Source: Polymyxa betae A26-41
Lineage: Eukaryota > Protista > Endomyxa: Phytomyxea
Length of the DNA: 64,000 nt
Direction of reading: 5' to 3'
Assembly: GCA_003693705.1 (NCBI GenBank)
Contig: RBZT01000323.1
Span: 15,625-79,624 of the forward strand
Shown: piece after piece, positions 1 through 15,159 of the stretch
Numbering within the stretch: the stretch's first letter is position 1
Layout of the letters: each line of letters opens with the position of its first letter
Position numbers and translations under genes: made by a program
The notes under the pieces: generated by a model
Databases searched by the model: none
Told to the model about the DNA's origin: nothing
What the model saw: only the letters and a program-made list of their open reading frames with translations

Positions 1-1408
1 CGGTCTGCTCAACAGAGCAATATGGGCACTTGAACGTCCTCATGGCAGAGCTCCTTCCAATACGAGGTATATTCTCCATAGAAGAGCGAGATATCACATG
101 ACCGCATAAGAGCATCATAGGCTGATCATCAACAGTTTTTGAAACTGGACAAACAAATGTCGAATGGTATTGAAACTTCTTCCCGAGGTCCAGTGCAATC
201 TAACAATGACAGAGTGTCAGATATTCAATCGTAGAACACAAATGACTTCAGGATTACTTCAGAAGCATTGCATGACACATTCAGGGCTGAACTCTGGGAT
301 TGCAAGGCATTAATCTTGACGAGCGGCGGCAAGGCGATCTGGCTGGCTGCCACGCTGAAAGAAATTCTGTACTATTGATAATCACTTATAAATAAAACCA
401 ACCAGACTGAAAGCGGGCTTTCTTTCGCCAGTCCCATGCCTTTACAGAAGACAGAAATGAAGATTTTCTCGAGGGCATCCCAATCTTCACTCGAAGTCCC
501 AACATATTTAAATTTCGAGAATACAAATATCAGCATTCCCATCAAATCCCCGATCTGTGCAGCTACGATTGCATAGTCAACGGGAACCTTTACAAATCCT
601 TTACAAATTACCGTATTCTGGAAATAATAAAGGGAAATTAGCTCGAGCGTACTTGACGGCAGCGCTAACATGCCCTTTCTCGAGCAATTGAAGATATTCC
701 ATTCGATGCAGGTGGAACAGCAAGAGATTATACTCCCTTCTATTGTCTTGACAACAGCACCAGCTAAATTCAGAAACATTAGCATTCTTTGGGTGCACAA
801 ACCGATCATCATCATTACTTCACGCATGGTGAGATCTCTTTTCGTCGTAACGACTGAAGAAGGATGTCAAGCGTAGCGAACCGTTCGTCAAACGAAAAGT
901 TCATTTGCGTCTCACTGATTAGAGATTGGGCGATACTGAACCGACCCGTTCGTAATAAATGGTTGACAATGATTCGGTCGAGAAGCTCATCATTCAGCAC
1001 AGTCGAATCTTTAACACCTTCAATCGAATCACAGACCTGCAGTAGGCGACTAAATCGCCAGATAAAACTATTGAAGGAATCATTTAGCGCATACTGCTTC
1101 CATCTTCTGAGATATAGTCGCGATTTCTACAGTCCCTGTTTTCAGTAGCCCAGCCAATCTGAGCAGCGAATCATTATAAAACAGATCCTCTAACAAAGCA
1201 TTATTTACTGCTTTCGAACTGGTTTTAGCAAATCCGCTGACGATTTACAATCTATTCTCCTTGTTGCCTCAAGCTCGTCAGCCAGGCTCCTGATATCGTT
1301 TGCAAACCGGGTTATGGCCGCTTCTGTCTGTTCTGATAATTGTCTCTGCTGATCTGCAAACACATCGAAAGACGCTTGTAGCCTGGGGACATCTGACCGC
1401 CTAAACAT
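1..1408 (-). CDS. RMND5: CTLH/GID complex E3 ligase RING subunit (RMND5/Gid2-like), multi-exon, 3' end runs off the window
   Basis: LisH-like LDRIIVNHLLRTGRFSIAQSL, CTLH-like LLFHLHRMEYLQLL..SAAVKYAR, and a manually translated C-terminus FQYHSTFVCPVSK..PMMLLCGHVIS..FKCPYC matching the degenerate Gid2 RING. Confidence 0.85.
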
Positions 1409-1734
1409 GATAGAAGACTAATGACGGACTAAGTGGAAAGGACATGACAGAACTTACACCAGTCAAGGCTGTAATGTTACAGCGATCGCTCGAACTCGCA
1501 TGGAACGATACCATTTCTACGACAGTCTGTACCAAAGCCACCTACAGTGGTCTGCCCCAAATCAAAATGGGGATATCAAGGCAAGGAAAGAGAGAGAGAT
1601 AAAGAGACGGGCGAAAAGACAGAGAATTAACAAGACTGAGTAATGTTACAAAGGTCAAAGAATGGCGATTTCTAGAGTGACCCTATCCATATGGCTTACA
1701 AGACGATGTTGGAGAGCGGAGAGCGAAAGCATAG

Positions 1735-3366
1735 TTATCTCTGTATTGCAGGAATGGACAAAGAGATCATGGAGGGATCCTGCGGCCTGGGCGGCTCTTT
1801 AAACCAGTCGTGTTCTAGAGCGTCTTTCGCAGAGATTCGTTGTTCGGGATCCAAAGCTAGAAGTCGCGATAGCAAATCGAATCCTTTTCCCGTTAGATAC
1901 GACGCGCTGGTTACCGATCGTCTCGGGAACAGATCCGACAGAGATCCTGATCAGAAAACTCAGATAAGAGAGGTAGAAGTTAGGCGAAATCGCACCTTTG
2001 GTAGGTTTCCAGGTCCAGTTTTGAGCATGAGGAAGTTTCATATAACCAGGCCAGTTTTCTTCGGTTGGAGATCCGACCAACGAGAATATTTTATGTAATT
2101 GGTCCAGCTCGCCCTGCGCCCCTTCGAAAAGCGGCGTCTTTGTTAGGAGCTCGGCGAAGATGCATCCTACAGACCACATATCGACAGCTGTGCTATAGGT
2201 CTTGGCTCCTGTCTTGCAATAAGCAATGCGCCAATACAGCATTGAATCTACAAACCTAAAAGAAGCTCTGGAGAGCGGTACCAAAGCGTGACAACCAGAG
2301 GCGAATATTCTTTGACGGGATCGCCGAATTTCCTTGCCAGACCTAAATCGCAGATCTTTAACATGCCATGGTTGTTGAGTAGTAAATTCGTGGTCTTCAA
2401 ATCTCGATGTATAATCCAGTGCGAATGCAGATATGCTACTCCCCGAAGAAGCTGCTGCATAAGACACTTCACCTCGCTCTGTGAGAAAGGCTCCTTTTTC
2501 GCCTTAATCAGCGATTTCACCTGAAAACAATTAATGTGTGTTTTCGGATAGCAAAGAATGCTGACTTCATGGGTCATATGTTCCATCACCATGAAGATTT
2601 GACCAGGACGGCGCCCAATCACGATCTCGCGCAGCTGGACCAGATTCGGATGACTAAGTGACATCAAAATATTGATTTCCCGAAGAGACGTCACTGGGAA
2701 TCCAGCAGCTTGCGAATCCATCTTGATTTTTTTTAAAGCGACCGCTGTGAAAATAAATTTGGAAAAGGGTATTAAGGCGATATAAAAGTACTTTGTTTTG
2801 TCGCTTTGTCAATAGCTTGATGAACAACACCATAGGCTCCTTCACTAATCGTCTTCACCCGTTCGAATTCATCCACGCTTCGGCATCCAAGACGGGCAAC
2901 AGAGGCGACAGTCGAGATGTAAGGCTGTGATCGTGATTGAACCTCGAGAGTGGCTTCACTATCACTATCCGAGTCGAGAGCACAAGAATCAGGTGGCGTT
3001 GGGAGTCGAACCTGAAAGGACACCATAAAAAACAGCCTCGTTAAAATGTGTTATGTGAAATATTTCCACCTGATCTTCATTTAGCTCTATTTTGTGTTCA
3101 TCGACGCTTTGACGTTCTGAGACAGGGCCGATTTCCGCCTCCTGCCTCTTAACTTCTTCAAGCAGATTCTGCTCCTCTTCTAGCAGTTTCTGCTTTTTCA
3201 GCTCTTCAGCAATGGCATCACGAAGCCATTGTGGCTGGCTGTGCAGCACTGGCTCGGGCGCCTTTTGATCACATACAGGGCGCTGATACGATCTCTGATT
3301 CGACGATCCTTGTCTATGCCCAGACCTGGGCGGGTCGTGACGGGGTCGTTTCGCCCAGGGATCCAT
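1735..3366 (-). CDS. CDK11: Cyclin-dependent kinase, CDK11/CDK10 (PITSLRE) class, multi-exon
   Basis: [70 protein letters not shown]; last exon translated by hand ends ...[14 protein letters not shown] at 1735. Confidence 0.9.
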
Positions 3367-3648
3367 TTGTTTTGAGAAGAAACCCGCAGTCCGAATCCGA
3401 TAATGCCTTCTTTCAACGACTTATTTCAAATGCTACCGATTTCTTGTTAAAAAGGAAACCAACATGCTTACCTAAAGATTTATGGCGATGATAGAACAAA
3501 AAAACACTGAGCGATACAAAACTTGAATCCAACAATATGGATAAGTTGATATTCTTAGCTTGTTTATTTCTGTTATAGATATTAGGCTATGCTAACAGGG
3601 ATTCTGATTGCCCATGTTTTAAGGATTCACCTTTAATTAAAACGCAGT

Positions 3649-4390
3649 ATGTCTGTAGAATCTAAACTCAGTGACTATGCGGTAAGTTTGTCTCTATCGG
3701 AATCCATAGTCGTTGCGATACCGTCAAATGACAGAGAGATTTTGTGCCAGCAACGATCAACATGCTGAGTCGTGCTCGAAACTGACAAGCGTATGGTTCA
3801 CCGACCTATACGACGATGGTAAACCGCAGATAGAGATGGAGCTGATCAGACCGGAATCCATTCCTGAGCCGTGTCGAACATTGCTTCATCACGACCACAA
3901 TATGACGCCCACGCTGGCAACATGGTGTCGATCTAAGGCGAATCTCAGCGTTCTTCAAAAAATTTTTGACATAAAGCAATCTGTTCTGAGCCGTATCATT
4001 ACGCTGGATTGCGAAGGTCATATCGTGGAGTTATCGTCTATCAGAATCTATTTGAGTTCGCTGCCGGAATATACACACCACAGGTGCCATTTCATGTCTT
4101 TGTTGTAACTTATGCACGTTGTTTATTGTTCGATAATTCTTAGAGTACTTTCTGGAGAGATACCTCTAGGCACCATGCTGATTGAGAATGGCATCTCCCA
4201 ACATTGTGTTCCAGATTGTTTTCTGAAAGTTTCCTGTGATTCTGTTCTAAAAAAGATTTTTGGCACGGACTCGGATGCGTTTCTTTTCGGCAGGAGAAAT
4301 CGATTGCTGTCAGATACAAAACAAGTCATTGCCGAGCTCATTGAAATAATTCCCGGCCCTAATCAGCTGGAGAAAATAAAAAAGCAGTAA
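3649..4390 (+). CDS. Chorismate-lyase (UbiC/UTRA)-fold-like protein resembling a bacterial hypothetical family
   Basis: Spliced via GT-AG intron 4084-4143: IPEPCRTLLHHDHNMTPTL..VLSRIITL..RVLSGEIPLGTMLIENGI..LFGRR..VIAELIEII. Start uncertain (3649 via a 28-nt intron, or 3728). Confidence 0.6.
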
Positions 4391-4497: not shown

Positions 4498-5939
<1,442 letters not shown>

Positions 5940-6506
5940 AGAAGAGGCCTGGATTTGATGTCGACAACAACCTTGGGATGCTAGGCTGCGCTGGTTCGTC
6001 TTCCAGGCACCGTCTCAGTAGCACAGATCCGACAATAATTCCCTATGAGATGGCAAGCCACACGCCGACAAGGTCCATATGGACGCGCGTGCTCGAGCCC
6101 TTTCGGCACAAGCCAGATATTTGTAGGTTTGTACCGGGCAGGTCGGCGATCACCGTCGAACTCTCTATTGCCTGCCATATTAAACGAATGAAGAAGGCCC
6201 CGCCATGATTCTCTCCCTGTAATGACAGGAAACACGTTCTCTGTCAAAGAGATCTCTCTTTCACCGTGACGAAAATCATGACGCAGTCATTAGTAGAGCT
6301 ATTGAACGATTGCTTTATCTGCTACAAGCGTATCGTAGCTTCTCGTATCGCAATACGTAATCTTAAAAAACAGCAATTGGTCGAAATTTGTTTGGAAGCA
6401 TGCGTTTCGCGCGTACATTGAAATAAAAATTCATTAGATATTTCTTTCGTCCGTCAAATTCTAAGATAACAGAGCAGCAATAATCGATCATAAACAATAT
6501 TGTTAC

Positions 6507-6675
6507 GGTTAACGATGCCCGGGCGTCGGGCGGCGCCTTTCGATTTCTTCAAAGATCAGATTCTGATCCCGAGCTTAGTCCCAGCATGTTGCTCAAACTC
6601 AAAGGTATATTCTCTTGCGCATGTTGATTCCTCAGCCGGAAGTTGTTAAGCTTTCAGATACGGATGCTTAAGAGG
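6507..6675 (-). pseudogene. Degenerate copy of the last exon of the adjacent MAPK gene
   Basis: Collinear with 4508-4675 (ggttaacga.gccc; gatcccgag.ttagt.cc; gctcaaactcaaag; agctttcagata.ggatg) with indels. Confidence 0.8.
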
Positions 6676-8070
6676 TTTTTTATCAAACATGTTACATAAT
6701 GTTGTCAGGCATTCTATGCGACATGCATAATTGAGGAATCGCGTACTCCTCTTCTTTGCCAAACATCGTTGTCTCAGAGTATTCGATGAAAAAGACGCTG
6801 TTGACTTGGCGAAATCTTTCAGCTGCTGATTTTGATGATGTCGAAAGAAGGAAGGAATTGAGTGACAGCAGTCAACTGTATCGCTTTCTGTAATTCGTTT
6901 TCTGTCGAATTCGAAACGACGCTTAGAACCAATTTGGTATTTTGAATCGCAGTCCTATAGTAACCTTCGGGTGAGAGGGCAAGCAATGTGACATTATGAA
7001 GTGATCTGCCTTATACATACGTTTGTTCAAAACGATTCTAAGTTCCGACGTGGAGATAGTAGACCCTAGTTTTTCTATTACAAAGGAAACGCTTAATTAC
7101 GGAATGGAAACCTTCAGCACAAGGCGGTAAACGCTTAATTACTAGCAGAATAGCAATAATGCGACAGAGCTGATGTAGAGCAAAGGTGACAGCCATGTAT
7201 AAACTGCATCATTCTGGTTCTGATTTCGAAGCAAATCTAAGCTTGGATTCGGCCGACATTTTGCTGACGGTTAGTTTTATCATTCGCGTTCGATGGTGGT
7301 CGTTTGCTAATCTCAACAGAATCACAAGCTGGCTCGAGCGCAAATTGGCGATGCCGACTGATCTGGTTTTATTAATCGTGCGGTATGGAACAATAACGGA
7401 AAGAAATCGGTCGGCAAGCCCCATAATCATAGAATTATCATGAGTGGTTGAGCCACGGACTCCGGACGGAGTGCCGCCCACCTTGCTGAAGGGACGGTAA
7501 CTAGGTAAGAACAATCCAACCCAATCTAATCCAAGCCCATATAATCCTGCATAAAGCCTGAATATCGTTATGTAGCAAGAACGAAAGACTCACAAAAAGT
7601 GACAGAAAAATAACTCTACAAACAACGTAACAGCGATAGCAAATCTATTCTTCAGTATCATTCAGCCCTGGGTTTGTTGGCAGAATATAAGGACTGGAAT
7701 AATAATGTAGGCTTGAACTGATAACCAATGGATTCGCTGACCATACAAATCGGTGTCGGTTCGCAGCAGAAACGATTGTTGGCGTTGTTCCAGCAACCAC
7801 ATGAACATAGAGTCTGACCAGCGAGGCAGGATCCTCCTGAGAATTAAGGCAGTAGAGAAGCACAGCCAATCCGATATAAAACCTCAGGATACTGAGTGGA
7901 GATATTGCACTGATTTATTAGGAAGATGCACATATAGACGTTTGATACTTCAAGAATGGTTGACAAGGCAATACGCATCAAGCCTGTAGTGACACATGAT
8001 AGAGAAATCGCGTATGGATAATTTCTGGATAGAGACTACCTTGAATGCTGTAAGCATTATTAGCGCTGAT

Positions 8071-10907: not shown

Positions 10908-11339
10908 ATGTCATTTGCTGCTGTAATCATTACAGTTGTCGCATTGTTGTCATTATCATCACCAGGAAATCCTGCTGATATCTTCTCATTGAAATGTTCC
11001 AAGACACATTCGTTCACAACTGTCTGTAAGCATCTTACGAAGGCGCCTGTAAATAAAGCTCAGCTTAGCGCGTTCGATTTGGAGAGATTGATTATCAGCA
11101 AAACCAACCTGGGCTCTGCTGAATGCCGTCACAACTATCGCTCGTTTCTATGTACTGCTTTATCGGAACCGTGTACTGAACTATTCGGGAATACAATCCC
11201 AATTTGCATGTCGATGTGCACAGACTATATCTCGTCATGCTACTATTTCAACTCGACAGAGGCTACAGATATCTGCAATGACAATCGCAAGGAACTCAAC
11301 CTAGCCCTTCCTGACCAGCACTGCTACTCATCAAGATAA
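10908..11339 (+). CDS. Small secreted cysteine-rich protein (143 aa, 10 Cys), frizzled-CRD-like
   Basis: Signal-peptide-like MSFAAVIITVVALLSLSS; pattern C..YRSFLC..EPC..PICMSMC..SSC..C..C; intronless. Confidence 0.7.
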   Translation: MSFAAVIITVVALLSLSSPGNPADIFSLKCSKTHSFTTVCKHLTKAPVNKAQLSAFDLERLIISKTNLGSAECRHNYRSFLCTALSEPCTELFGNTIPICMSMCTDYISSCYYFNSTEATDICNDNRKELNLALPDQHCYSSR

Positions 11340-11874
11340 GCAGCAACTACCTCTAACGTTAATAGATTCGTGATGAAAACATCCCTAACTGAATAATAAA
11401 GATTATTTGCAGATGCAGATGCCTCTTGGCAGACTGTCAGAAAGATCTCGATATTTGCTCGCCTGAAAGCGCCTCGGTTGCAGGCAACAGCCGCATCGAG
11501 TCGGATCTCATTCAATCCCAGCATTCTCACTGCTGGTCAATGTCGGTTCCACAAACACCGACTAACGCTGCATTTCACAGACAAAACCGAGATGTTTTAG
11601 TCAACAAAATCAGCGCAACTAAATAGATGACTGTTTAGCGGGGTGGGCCCGCCCGTTTCTGCTCTCACTGCCCGATACAGAAGCGATATTCTGGGAACCG
11701 CTACCATTAATCCCATTGATCAATCACAGTCTCGCATATTGCACCATTCCGTTCTTCAGCCTCACATCTTTCTATTGTCATGCGATTTGTATAGAGTGGC
11801 CCCGAAAGTAGACATTTTTTTAATTCGGCTGGCCGATATTAGATTATAGAGACCCGTCTAACTAGCTAGAAATT

Positions 11875-14713
11875 ATGGCTGGAGACAGTGGGCAGAAGCT
11901 CGATATGGGCATTGAAGCCAATCAGCTCGAGCTTATTGCCGTTATCACTATTATGGTCACGCTGCTCTTACACTATGCTTCAGTAAAGCTCGAACAGGTC
12001 TGAGAGTATACTGTTTTTATAAATAATGTATTGGCGTGCTTCTTTTTATTCTTTTCGGCTGATAGGTTTATCTCATATTGTTGTCAGGTTCTGAAAAGGC
12101 ATAAGCATTTATCAGAAATGCTACATCATTTATATCGAGAGCTGATGGTCCTTGGTCTAATCTCGTTCGGGCTGTTTGCTGTTGAAAAGCAAAAAGGATC
12201 GTCGTTCAGCCATGATACAAAGGAGATTTTCGAGAATATCCATATAATGGTGTTGAACTTTCAAACTTATCTCCATCACGTTTTCTAAGCCTGCGAACAG
12301 ATTTTTTTGATTGCATTTGCCTACACCGTTTTCACTGTGATATTAATGACGGTTTCCGTCCGAATATCAAAATTTTGGGATGGTGTTGAAGAACAAGACC
12401 ATGATTATTACTTCAGGCTAAAAGCCCAGTTTGAAGATATTCGCGAAAAGTTCAAAAACATGGGCATTATCTCCAAGATATTCAGCGTATGCCTGCTGTT
12501 TAAGTATGTTCTCCATTAGCAAGTTTCTGCCTTTCGATAATATCCCGTCAGGCATTTTAAATTAGTTGAGCAAGTCTCATTCCACGATCTCAAGCTTCAT
12601 TTTGTGCACTCAAACCATCTGCCCTCATCATTCTCCTTCGCCAGATACCTCCGTAAATGCAAGAGTCACGTCTTATTGCAATTTGGAGATATTCATCCAG
12701 CTTGCTGGATGACTTTGATCATTATTTTGATGTGCGATATGCTGCTAAGAAATTCCATCGCCATTCCTCATGGTAGTTTGTCAATTGAGCTCAAATTTGG
12801 AACATACTGAATTGCTCTCAGATATCATGATTCGAATATGGCAGGTGACTTTGGTAGTTCTCGGGTTTCTTCTCTGTATCGTTCCCATCGCTGTGCTTGT
12901 TAAGACTCGAGCTATTCTCTCAGAAATCATGCTGCATCCAGAAATGATCGATTTCGACCCAGTTGCTGCCAGGTGATGGTTTATCTCGTCGTGTTCGTCT
13001 CCCGGCTAAATTCTTTTTAGGTATTACATCGACCATTGGAGAGACTCGGAAGATGGGGCTCCAGAGCAATCGTTGTCGTACGCTTTTGCGGAGAATAGTG
13101 TCCAAGGAATTAACATCCATTTCACTGCCGAATCTGCTGCACGACAGGTTGCCAGAACCTTTCAAATAGACCATTGGGGCCAAAAAAGTGCACATTTGAA
13201 TGTATGAGAAGCAACATTAACTGATTTCTCATCTAGATTCCAGTGAGTCTACTGTCCCAGCATTTCTAGCGAATCTGGATCCTGCTTGTCATCTGGAGCA
13301 GGACAACGATGCTACTCTGGGTGTCGATGAGCAGCCTCGGCTTGGCAGGGTCCAATCCGTGCGAAATGTCATGTTCCATCAAATGAATCTATTCTGGTTC
13401 AATTCCCATATCTTCATGCTGCGGTAAAGTCAATCTAATCTGCTGTTTAAATTAGTTCGCTTATTGTCTGACAGGCTGATGCAAGTCTGCCAGTTCTTAG
13501 CGGTTTGGTATTTTGCCATTCTGTTCCAATATCACGCACAGTTGATTGGCAAATACTATTTCATGTATCCTTTGGCTGCAAGTACGTATTTTACAATCTT
13601 GGCTGATATGCTATGTTGATCGTCTTGTTATAGTCCCACTGATTGTGCTTCTGACCTGCTTCTCTTGGACATTACCGGTTTATACGATTATTATCCATGT
13701 CGGTCAATTAGTTGATCTTGACATCGTCCTTGAAGCTCGAATGAAAGCATCAAGGCCAGCTCAGGTAACAGCTTCTCAATCGTCTATTCGATCATTTTAA
13801 TTAGGGGCTTAGGACCTTACTACTGTGGTTGTTGCTCCAGCTCAATTAAGGCGAACATCGACGTTAATGCTCTTACCTAGACGTGAGCGATTGAGGCTTC
13901 AGGTATCATCAACTCGGTTGCCGTTTCCCAACATTGACCATGTAATGCAGCTGTCGGTCATTGTATTTGGTGGCAGATTCCAAATGGCATTATTCTGGGG
14001 CATCCTCATCCAGACCAGCCTGGTGCTCTTCTATTATTTCCCCTCGCTTTCTATTCATTCGTCGATTCCGTATCTGACGCTTGTGATCCCGTCATTGTTT
14101 TTATTTGAAATGTAATCTTATCTTGTTATGCCGTTTGGCAATTCTAATTGTTGGTCTGCAGGGGTGCAAAATTCTACGCTGCGGGTTACAAGTTCTTCAA
14201 GAAATCGCACATTGCGCTTTTCGACCTATTTATTGTCCTGTCTACGTTCGCTCTGTCAATTTTACAACTATGCATTGGTGTGGTGAGTCCTCCAGCTACA
14301 GCTATTGTGCTGTTGAGAGTATTCCAAATAATTCGTGCTTCTCGATATGGCAGAATTATGCGGCAGAACCAAGAAAGCATTTACGAAGGTAGTTACCGCT
14401 TGCAGACACTCATCCATCTATGTCGTTAAGAAATCTTTCTCTAGCTAAAATCGGACAAACCGAAATCGAAATGCAAATGAAGCGTACGCTGGAGAATTTG
14501 GCTTCAGAGCCAAGCCAGCACCGGAAATGGGTTTCGACGGGTTCGAACTCGGACGGCGTCATTGTACAAGACGATTTCCTTCTCAGGAGGGCTCGAACGT
14601 TACCGGCTAGTAGTTCGCCTCAGGCTACCAGGGTTAAGAATTTCAAATTCTCGGCAGGAAATGAGAAGTTTGAGATCCCGGTCCAGTCGTTCGTTGTTCG
14701 ACCTGAGTTATAA
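11875..14713 (+). CDS. MLO: MLO-family multipass membrane protein with a C-terminal voltage-sensor-like (S1-S4) domain, many exons
   Basis: MLO-like motifs RELMVLGLISFGL, FENIHIM.FLIA, FSFARYLRK..FGDIHPACW, LFWFNS, TLPVYTII; later exons give LFLFEMGAKFYAAGYKFF..LFDLFIV (S2-S3) and LLRVFQIIRASRYGRIMR (S4). Confidence 0.8.
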
Positions 14714-14738
14714 ACTTAATATTTGTATCTACCATAAA

Positions 14739-15159
14739 TTAATTGTTCAATTTGAATTTGTGCTTGCACTTGAGACATTCGTAGAAGACCGTCTGACCTT
14801 CATCAGCCGATCGCGTCTGCATCGTGTAGAATGACAGCTCGAGGTGACCGCACTCAGGGCAATCTTCTTTCACGATTGCCCTCGATTGAGATTCGTCAGC
14901 ATTAGACAATACAATAGTGTCGGCATTCTTGGAAACAGATTGAGAATCTATCTGTTTAGCAACAGATAACACTGAACAGATGCTCAATATCAACGACGAC
15001 TGAATTTGTGGAAATAAAATTACGTTCCGAGCGGCAGAGAAAACCGCAATCGTAGCACGAGACGTTATCGTCATCATCTGGTAACGACATAATCGAATGG
15101 CATGTTGGGCAAAATGAAGCAGTTGGAGAGAGTTGCTGGAAGGTCCACTTTAATGCCAT
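14739..15159 (-). CDS. RPA12: RNA polymerase I subunit RPA12
   Basis: N-terminal zinc ribbon FCPTC..CYDC and TFIIS-like C-terminus [27 protein letters not shown]; one intron. Confidence 0.9.

What the first reader, a model, noticed from the sequence alone, without database searches (positions are those of the whole stretch)
11875..14713. MLO protein fused to a voltage-sensor-like domain: candidate voltage-regulated MLO Ca2+ channel
Seen: the 5' exons encode MLO hallmarks (RELMVLGLISF, IHIM.FLIA, FSFARYLRK, LFWF, TLPVY). Across ordinary GT-AG introns the frame continues without a stop into four hydrophobic segments (~13950-14360). These carry voltage-sensor signatures: S2 F-x-x-E-x-x-x-K (FLFEMGAK), S3 FD (LFDLFIV) and an Arg-periodic S4 (LRVFQIIRASRYGRIMR). 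No S5-pore-S6 follows. Known: plant MLOs are multipass Ca2+-permeable channels and mildew susceptibility factors regulated by a C-terminal calmodulin-binding tail; pore-less VSDs occur in Hv1 and voltage-sensing phosphatases. Inference: here the regulatory tail is a VSD, coupling membrane potential to an MLO pore in a non-plant eukaryote. I know of no characterised protein with this architecture.
Basis: partly seen in the sequence, partly recalled or inferred. Interest (0 to 1): 0.88.

Follow-up and report, generated by a model that had tools for sequence, protein, structure and literature searches.

The report
MLO protein with attached voltage sensor
A root-dwelling protist makes one membrane protein that joins an MLO domain (the plant family that forms calcium pores) to a voltage sensor of the kind found in nerve channels, a pairing we found described nowhere, which may be a new way to let voltage control calcium entry.

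Summary
One 13-exon gene (11875-14713, 732 aa, no internal stop) is covered by single spliced contigs in three runs of one study. It encodes a divergent seven-helix MLO domain followed by a complete, pore-less S1-S4 voltage-sensor domain (VSD). The genome matches Polymyxa betae. The architecture recurs in Spongospora, two further close relatives, Ancoracysta (both Pfam domains above cut-off) and intron-free environmental ORFs. The folded Spongospora VSD matches Ci-VSP, KCNQ2 and NaV/CaV sensors best. The S4 pattern R-Q-R-R-R-R is invariant in five species, and the inner F/E/D centre is intact in the four close relatives. It fails the Hv1 signature, and it lacks the plant MLO disulfides and calmodulin Trp. 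Voltage control of an MLO pore is inferred, not shown (about 0.4). Against it: outer counter-charges are missing, S4 is degenerate in three relatives, the pore positions carry Phe, and no S4-S5 link exists. Literature searches found no MLO-VSD description. This scan already reported the same architecture at a second locus of this genome (s1-690256), which I confirmed exon by exon.

The parts
11875..14713 (+). Whole gene, 13 exons, 732 aa: MLO-like domain fused to a pore-less voltage-sensor domain
   Evidence: Spliced contigs over all 12 introns; open frame; Spongospora orthologue matches colinearly over residues 16-716
11875..11997 (+). Exon 1: start codon and MLO TM1
   Evidence: 50% identical to the orthologue
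12088..12249 (+). Exon 2: MLO TM2, the pore-lining helix of plant trimers (E59, M61, G64, S67 kept; H54, F68, F71 differ), and a short cysteine-free outer loop
   Evidence: Pfam Mlo E 0.012; 74% to the orthologue; offsets against published pore residues
12301..12972 (+). Exons 3-5: TM3, cytosolic loop 2 with the FSFARYL motif, TM4, TM5
   Evidence: helices in the orthologue's model; orthologue Mlo 27.4 bits, cut-off 24
13021..13423 (+). Exons 6-7: disordered cytosolic loop ending in the LFWF motif (13389-13400)
   Evidence: pLDDT below 50 over orthologue residues 299-380
13475..13764 (+). Exons 8-9: TM6, TM7 (TLPVY at 13669-13683) and the following helix, which lacks the calmodulin-binding Trp
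   Evidence: exon 9 is 81% identical to the orthologue
13813..13902 (+). Exon 10: cytosolic linker between MLO TM7 and the VSD
   Evidence: Both flanking junctions are spliced in three runs
13951..14111 (+). Exon 11: VSD S0/S1 (about 13978-14040; Q535 at the Hv1 Asp position) and most of S2 (F564 at 14098, E567 at 14107)
14162..14388 (+). Exon 12: end of S2 (K571), S3 (D589 at 14223) and S4 (R620 at 14316 to R635 at 14361), running on as a cytosolic helix
   Evidence: Ion_trans E 5e-4; orthologue VSD 42.1 bits, cut-off 25; fold matches; conservation
14445..14713 (+). Exon 13: soluble tail, a helix continuing the S4 extension; no S5-pore-S6; stop codon

Best explanation
An 11-helix membrane protein: a divergent MLO domain (7 TM) plus a C-terminal S1-S4 voltage sensor. 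SHOWN: one spliced transcript, both domains, no S5-S6, conserved S4 charges. INFERRED from plant MLOs: three subunits form a central TM2-lined cation (Ca2+) pore, here closed by a Phe gate (F68/F71). INFERRED: each VSD sits at the rim; its S4 arginines move past the F564/E567/D589 centre with membrane potential; the long cytosolic helix that continues S4 passes this movement to the MLO cytosolic face, much as the peripheral VSD of SLC9C1 acts through cytosolic helices. The sensor would replace the calmodulin and disulfide-linked controls of plant MLOs. The direction of gating cannot be told from sequence.
For: Single spliced contigs. Same architecture in Spongospora A0A0H5R9K4, Ancoracysta twista (Mlo 30.3 and Ion_trans 45.7 bits, both above cut-off), an intron-matched syntenic locus L046 and intron-free ORFs P0002/P0018, P0006, P0010. 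Leave-one-out VSD profiles score these at 37-54 bits. Folded VSD: Ci-VSP Z 12.3, rmsd 2.8 A over 123 residues, and the top 13 rows are all VSD-bearing proteins. All 6 periodic S4 positions are invariant in four close relatives (other positions 3 of 10) and also in Ancoracysta (0 of 10). A neutral Gln in the series is also seen in working KCNQ sensors (PMC13095418). Topology fits: MLO ends in the cytosol (PMC4824068), where a VSD begins. S4 runs on as one helix, residues 605-640. TM2 keeps M, G, S and two Glu of the plant pore. Plant MLOs conduct Ca2+ (PMC9810639).
Against: There are no functional data. There is no acidic residue at the outer S1 or S2 counter-charge positions in the four close relatives, and S2 holds two prolines. 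P0002, P0006 and P0010 keep the VSD with only 2-3 of the five S4 charges. P0033, of the same MLO subfamily, shows no VSD. The AtMLO6 E56 and T73 positions are His and Phe, so the pore may not conduct Ca2+. The trimeric pore itself rests on two preprints using prediction and simulation, one with cross-linking data; no solved MLO structure was matched. The trimer could not be modelled here.
Confidence: 0.42

Rival explanations
1. The VSD is a structural or lipid/ligand-coupled module that barely senses voltage, like weak or immobile VSDs in some channels; the MLO pore is gated by other inputs.
For: Outer counter-charges missing, prolines in S2. S4 is degenerate in three relatives that still keep S1-S3 and the helix after S4. 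The second locus of this genome has Glu at the +3 position.
Against: All S4 charge positions are invariant between the close relatives and Ancoracysta while the residues between them change. The F/E/D centre is intact. Conserved arginines could, however, also bind anionic lipid.
Confidence: 0.28
2. The VSD senses voltage, but the MLO part is not a channel here; voltage controls a scaffolding or secretion role of MLO, as Ci-VSP controls an enzyme.
For: Phe at both narrow positions of TM2 in almost all family members, and His at the exit Glu position. MLOs also act in polarised secretion (abstract of 10.64898/2026.04.10.716904).
Against: The pore-lining TM2-TM3 stretch is among the best conserved parts (74%; invariant E, G, E). 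Hydrophobic gates are normal in closed channels (own knowledge).
Confidence: 0.17
3. The VSD conducts protons itself, like Hv1 or a gating-pore leak, and the fusion pairs a proton path with the MLO domain.
For: Pore-less VSD followed by a long helix, as in Hv1. Asp at the S1 filter position in Ancoracysta, P0010 and P0002. An R-x-W-R stretch in the second locus.
Against: The window protein has Gln at the S1 Asp position and R-V-F-Q instead of R-x-W-R; both defining Hv features fail.
Confidence: 0.09
4. Artefact: two neighbouring genes or a read-through transcript joined by mis-prediction.
For: The three supporting runs come from one study and are assembled contigs, not raw reads.
Against: In-frame spliced joins on both sides of exon 10; full-length orthologues in other species, including intron-free ORFs.
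Confidence: 0.01

Closest known systems
Plant MLO proteins (PF03094; HvMlo, AtMLO1/2/5/6/7) and the MLO-like proteins of protists (Kusch et al. 2016, PMC4824068)
   Same: Seven helices; RELM-type TM2 with M, G, S kept; FSF/YL loop motif, FWF and LPxY motifs; orthologue above the Pfam cut-off.
   Different: No extracellular cysteines near TM2-TM3, no calmodulin-binding Trp after TM7, Phe at the pore-narrowing positions, and four further helices forming a VSD. Kusch et al. list EF-hand and other fusions and 2-21 TM topologies, and name Plasmodiophora among MLO holders, but the word 'voltage' does not occur in the main text (supplements not held).
SLC9C1 (sperm voltage-gated Na+/H+ exchanger)
   Same: An unrelated transport domain followed by a C-terminal, peripheral S1-S4 VSD whose long S4 enters cytosolic helices (PMC13095418); its VSD is among the fold matches (Z 9.4). 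Best model for how coupling could work.
   Different: Different transport domain; no cyclic-nucleotide-binding domain here; SLC9C1 has an outer S1 Glu counter-charge that this protein lacks.
Voltage-sensing phosphatase (Ci-VSP, TPTE)
   Same: Pore-less VSD; best structural match (Z 12.3, rmsd 2.8 A).
   Different: In VSP the sensor is N-terminal and drives a soluble enzyme through the linker after S4; here it is C-terminal to a membrane domain and no phosphatase follows.
Hv1 and TMEM266
   Same: Pore-less VSD with a long helix after S4.
   Different: No S1 Asp and no RxWRxxR motif; fused to MLO.
CaV/NaV/KCNQ voltage-gated channels (PF00520)
   Same: The VSD sequence profile matches CaV and NaV sensors best; S4 with a Gln in the series resembles KCNQ.
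   Different: Only profile positions 4-111 of 241 are matched; no S5-pore-S6.

Membership tests
MLO family (broad, PF03094) | Pfam Mlo above the gathering score | tested here: met
   Met by the orthologue P0001 (27.4 vs 24 bits) and by Ancoracysta (30.3). The window's own exons score below cut-off alone; the joined protein was not searched.
MLO family (broad, PF03094) | Seven TM helices with a cytosolic C-terminal side | tested here: met
   Hydropathy and seven long helices before residue 457 in the orthologue's model, pLDDT 75-95; sidedness is inferred from plant MLO.
Land-plant MLO | Four invariant extracellular cysteines (HvMlo C86, C98, C114, C367) | tested here: not met
   No Cys in the 45 residues after the TM2 Gly in the window protein or in any VSD-bearing relative (feature).
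Land-plant MLO | Calmodulin-binding Leu/Trp after TM7 | tested here: not met
   No Trp between TM7 (453) and S1 (524) (feature). Calmodulin binding by another site is not excluded.
Land-plant MLO | TM2 pore residues (AtMLO6 E56, M63, L64, G66, S69, T73) | tested here: inconclusive
   By offset from the Gly: H54, M61, V62, G64, S67, F71; HvMlo E55 and E63 positions are Glu. Mapping assumes no gaps and used no plant sequence.
Land-plant MLO | Trimer with Ca2+ conductance | not testable with these tools
   Only monomers can be folded here; no electrophysiology.
Voltage-sensor domain (S1-S4) | Four-helix VSD fold | tested here: met
   Orthologue model pLDDT 78.6; Ci-VSP Z 12.3 and top 13 rows VSD proteins; Foldseek probability 1.00 but E only 0.06-0.12; Pfam Ion_trans 42.1 bits.
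Voltage-sensor domain (S1-S4) | S2 Phe and Glu with S3 Asp (charge-transfer centre) | tested here: met
   F564, E567, K571, D589.
Voltage-sensor domain (S1-S4) | Basic residues at every third S4 position | tested here: met
   R620, Q623, R626, R629, R632, R635; invariant in five species. The register against the Phe plug was not resolved.
Voltage-sensor domain (S1-S4) | Outer acidic counter-charge in S1 or S2 | tested here: not met
   Q535 and T557 in the window; Asp in S1 of Ancoracysta, P0010 and P0002.
Voltage-sensor domain (S1-S4) | Voltage-driven S4 movement | not testable with these tools
   Needs gating-current or fluorometry recordings.
Hv proton channels | S1 selectivity Asp | tested here: not met
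   Gln535; feature from PMC10377628.
Hv proton channels | RxWRxxR in S4 | tested here: not met
   R-V-F-Q-I-I-R.
6TM voltage-gated channels | S5-pore-S6 after S4 | tested here: not met
   No hydrophobic segment after S4 in the window or six relatives; Pfam match ends at position 111 of 241.
Voltage-sensing phosphatase | Phosphatase domain after S4 | tested here: not met
   97-residue tail; its last exon has no Pfam match.

The most novel reading that the evidence does not exclude
A new class of voltage-gated Ca2+ channel: a trimeric MLO pore, unrelated to the S5-S6 pore, gated by a C-terminal S1-S4 sensor through cytosolic helices, present in at least two distant eukaryote lineages and giving a direct handle on how MLO pores open.
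Probability: 0.35. Interest if true: 0.92.

Novelty: new variant of a known kind. Interest (0 to 1): 0.72.

Why it matters
Few proteins are known in which a voltage sensor works without the classical pore: Hv1, the voltage-sensing phosphatases, TMEM266 and SLC9C1 (PMC13095418). An MLO domain would be a new partner. How MLO pores open is an open question; a natural fusion with a sensor makes it directly testable by voltage clamp, and serves as a Rosetta-stone clue like the MLO-EF-hand fusions. Natural relatives with intact, degenerate or absent sensors form a ready comparison set. Ca2+ signalling is reported to matter for Spongospora zoospore motility (PMC8921600, abstract only), so the gene is a candidate for study in this group of root parasites. 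If the sensor is inert, it is still an undescribed architecture of moderate interest.

Tried and rejected
Joined step left out: the spliced 732-aa model was never sent to a search or folding tool. It was built in a script only to check the frame, hydropathy and residue numbers. Searches used single exons by reference, and the Spongospora orthologue P0001 stood in for folding.

Dead ends: Pfam Mlo search of the own genome found nothing, and its controls were silent too. Exon 12 alone found no PDB chain. Homologue searches were word-limited (4, 11 and 3 hits), so the family's range is a lower bound.

Weak members not counted: the C-terminal segments of P0022 (Cercozoa sp. M6MM), P0016 and P0012 look VSD-like by eye but score 7 bits or less out of profile and have no Ion_trans match.

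Trees: neither the MLO tree nor the VSD tree decides between one and several origins. In the VSD tree Ancoracysta fell among channel VSDs without support.

Rejected: two genes; truncated 6TM channel; Hv1 member; VSP member. Literature: three searches pairing MLO with voltage terms gave no relevant paper; a 623-organism channel survey and a voltage-sensor review do not mention MLO. Subscription papers and database architecture lists were not searchable.

Full report
VERDICT. The locus is one spliced gene for an 11-helix protein: a divergent MLO domain followed by a pore-less voltage-sensor domain (VSD). The architecture is conserved in other protists and I found no description of it. That the sensor gates an MLO calcium pore is plausible but unshown (about 0.4).

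1. THE OBSERVATION. Contigs of three public runs (X4, X5, X6; one study) skip twelve GT..AG introns of 48-90 nt, and in X5 and X6 a single contig runs from about 11740 to 14733. The runs carry no library label, but contigs that lack all twelve introns are most simply transcripts. The exons give 2199 nt, 732 codons and no internal stop. A fourth run (X1, another study, a related strain at 90-99% identity) shows 11 silent and 2 amino-acid changes among the listed coding differences.

2. THE ORGANISM. The assembly has 27,085,814 bases in 1001 contigs. The published Polymyxa betae draft has 27,085,946 bp in 1,001 contigs (PMC6328671). I take it as P. betae, a phytomyxid root parasite; this is inference from the match and from the nearest named relative.

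3. RELATIVES. Exon 2 found a 719-aa protein at 74% identity, Spongospora subterranea A0A0H5R9K4, colinear with the whole gene. Its N-terminal part passes the Pfam Mlo cut-off (27.4 vs 24) and residues 490-650 pass Ion_trans (42.1 vs 25), over profile positions 4-111 only. An Ancoracysta twista protein passes both cut-offs on one chain; Ancoracysta is not a rhizarian (own knowledge). An unnamed genomic contig (L046, 54% GC) holds the orthologue in matching exons, followed by the same converging RPA12-like gene, and P0026 is a further orthologue fragment. P0002/P0018, P0006 and P0010 encode both parts in one intron-free ORF; leave-one-out profiles confirm their VSDs at 37-54 bits. The genome has a second MLO-plus-VSD locus on contig C539, whose VSD exon passes Ion_trans (29 bits); I have no transcript evidence for it. 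This scan had reported the architecture on another piece of this genome before (s1-690256), most likely that locus. Close MLO relatives without a clear VSD also exist (P0033; P0022, P0016 and P0012 are unresolved). Trees do not tell one origin from several.

4. THE VSD. The orthologue's domain folds into four helices (pLDDT 78.6). Against 48,161 solved chains the best match is the Ci-VSP sensor (Z 12.3, rmsd 2.8 A, 123 residues), and the top 13 rows are VSD-bearing proteins; unrelated bundles start at Z 10.3, so the margin is modest. Sequence profiles agree independently, with CaV and NaV sensors at the top. The inner centre is intact: F564, E567, K571, D589. S4 reads R620, Q623, R626, R629, R632, R635. 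All six positions are invariant in four close relatives, against 3 of 10 of the positions between them, and stay so with Ancoracysta added, against 0 of 10. KCNQ sensors also have a Gln in the series (PMC13095418). There are deficits. The outer counter-charge positions are Q535 and T557, and S2 has two prolines. P0002, P0006 and P0010 keep only two or three S4 charges. Both Hv hallmarks fail. Nothing hydrophobic follows S4.

5. THE MLO PART. The full-length model (pLDDT 75.3, pTM 0.73) shows seven long helices before residue 457, a disordered loop, two short linker helices, the VSD, and S4 continuing as one helix to residue 640 followed by another. No solved structure matches the MLO part. Two 2026 preprints place the plant pore at the centre of a trimer, lined by TM2. 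By offset from the TM2 glycine, the protein keeps M, G, S and two glutamates, but has His at the AtMLO6 E56 position and Phe at both narrow positions. It lacks the four extracellular cysteines and the calmodulin-binding Trp of land-plant MLOs. It is thus an MLO-like protein in the broad sense, not a land-plant-type MLO.

6. MECHANISM. Most likely (0.42): a trimeric MLO pore with a tight Phe gate, modulated by three peripheral sensors. The sidedness works, since MLO ends in the cytosol where a VSD begins. The sensor follows the pore helices, so no S4-S5 linker exists; force would have to pass through the long helix after S4 or through the linker before S1. SLC9C1 is the precedent for a C-terminal, peripheral VSD acting through cytosolic helices. 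Shown: transcript, domains, fold, conserved charges. Inferred: trimer, conduction, S4 movement, coupling. Rivals: an inert or lipid-coupled VSD (0.28); a working sensor on a non-conducting MLO (0.17); a proton-conducting VSD (0.09); artefact (0.01).

7. NOVELTY. The family survey of Kusch et al. lists MLO fusions with EF-hands and others, and protist topologies of 2-21 helices, but never mentions voltage in its main text (supplements not held). Searches pairing MLO with voltage-sensor terms found nothing relevant, nor do a sensor review and a 623-organism channel survey mention MLO. The Spongospora entry is named only 'MLO-like protein'. Coverage is limited to open papers. Both modules are known, so I class it as a new variant of a known kind; it would be a new channel class if voltage gating of the MLO pore is shown (0.35). 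Interest 0.72.

Noticed in passing
window 13424-13923 (run X1): A contig of a related strain keeps the gene's + strand introns but skips 13823-13876 (CT..AC, a minus-strand GT..AG intron): a spliced antisense RNA over exons 8-10. One contig at depth 4.5; no minus-strand ORF of 50 aa or more lies there.
   Followed up: partly
L044 (G000:C539:48500-53500), about 1380-3530: Second MLO-plus-VSD locus of this genome; its S4 reads R-x-x-E-x-x-R-x-W-R, unlike the window's gene. Checked exon by exon only.
   Followed up: partly
L045 (G000:C592:69500-79000), 1590-4327 (-) and 4960-7071 (+): Head-to-head pair of very divergent MLO-like genes with long low-complexity loops; no VSD seen, no Pfam match; they group together on a long branch.
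   Followed up: partly
window 10908-11339 (+): Small stand-alone ORF with a weak Frizzled cysteine-rich domain match (PF01392, E 1.8e-5, below cut-off), just upstream of the gene and transcribed in the same runs. Also noted as s1-693337.
   Followed up: partly
window 14739-15150 (-): Converging RPA12-like gene (TFIIS zinc ribbon) with a spliced intron at 14972-15023; its contigs overlap the 3' end of the MLO-VSD transcript, and the gene order is kept in L046.
   Followed up: partly
window 14314 (run X1): A T>C difference changes L619, next to the first S4 arginine, to Ser in the related strain; single contig at depth 4.4, may be an error.
   Followed up: no
G000, loci L014-L043: The genome holds at least 32 Ion_trans matches on about 20 contigs, a sizeable set of voltage-gated-type channels for an obligate parasite.
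   Followed up: no
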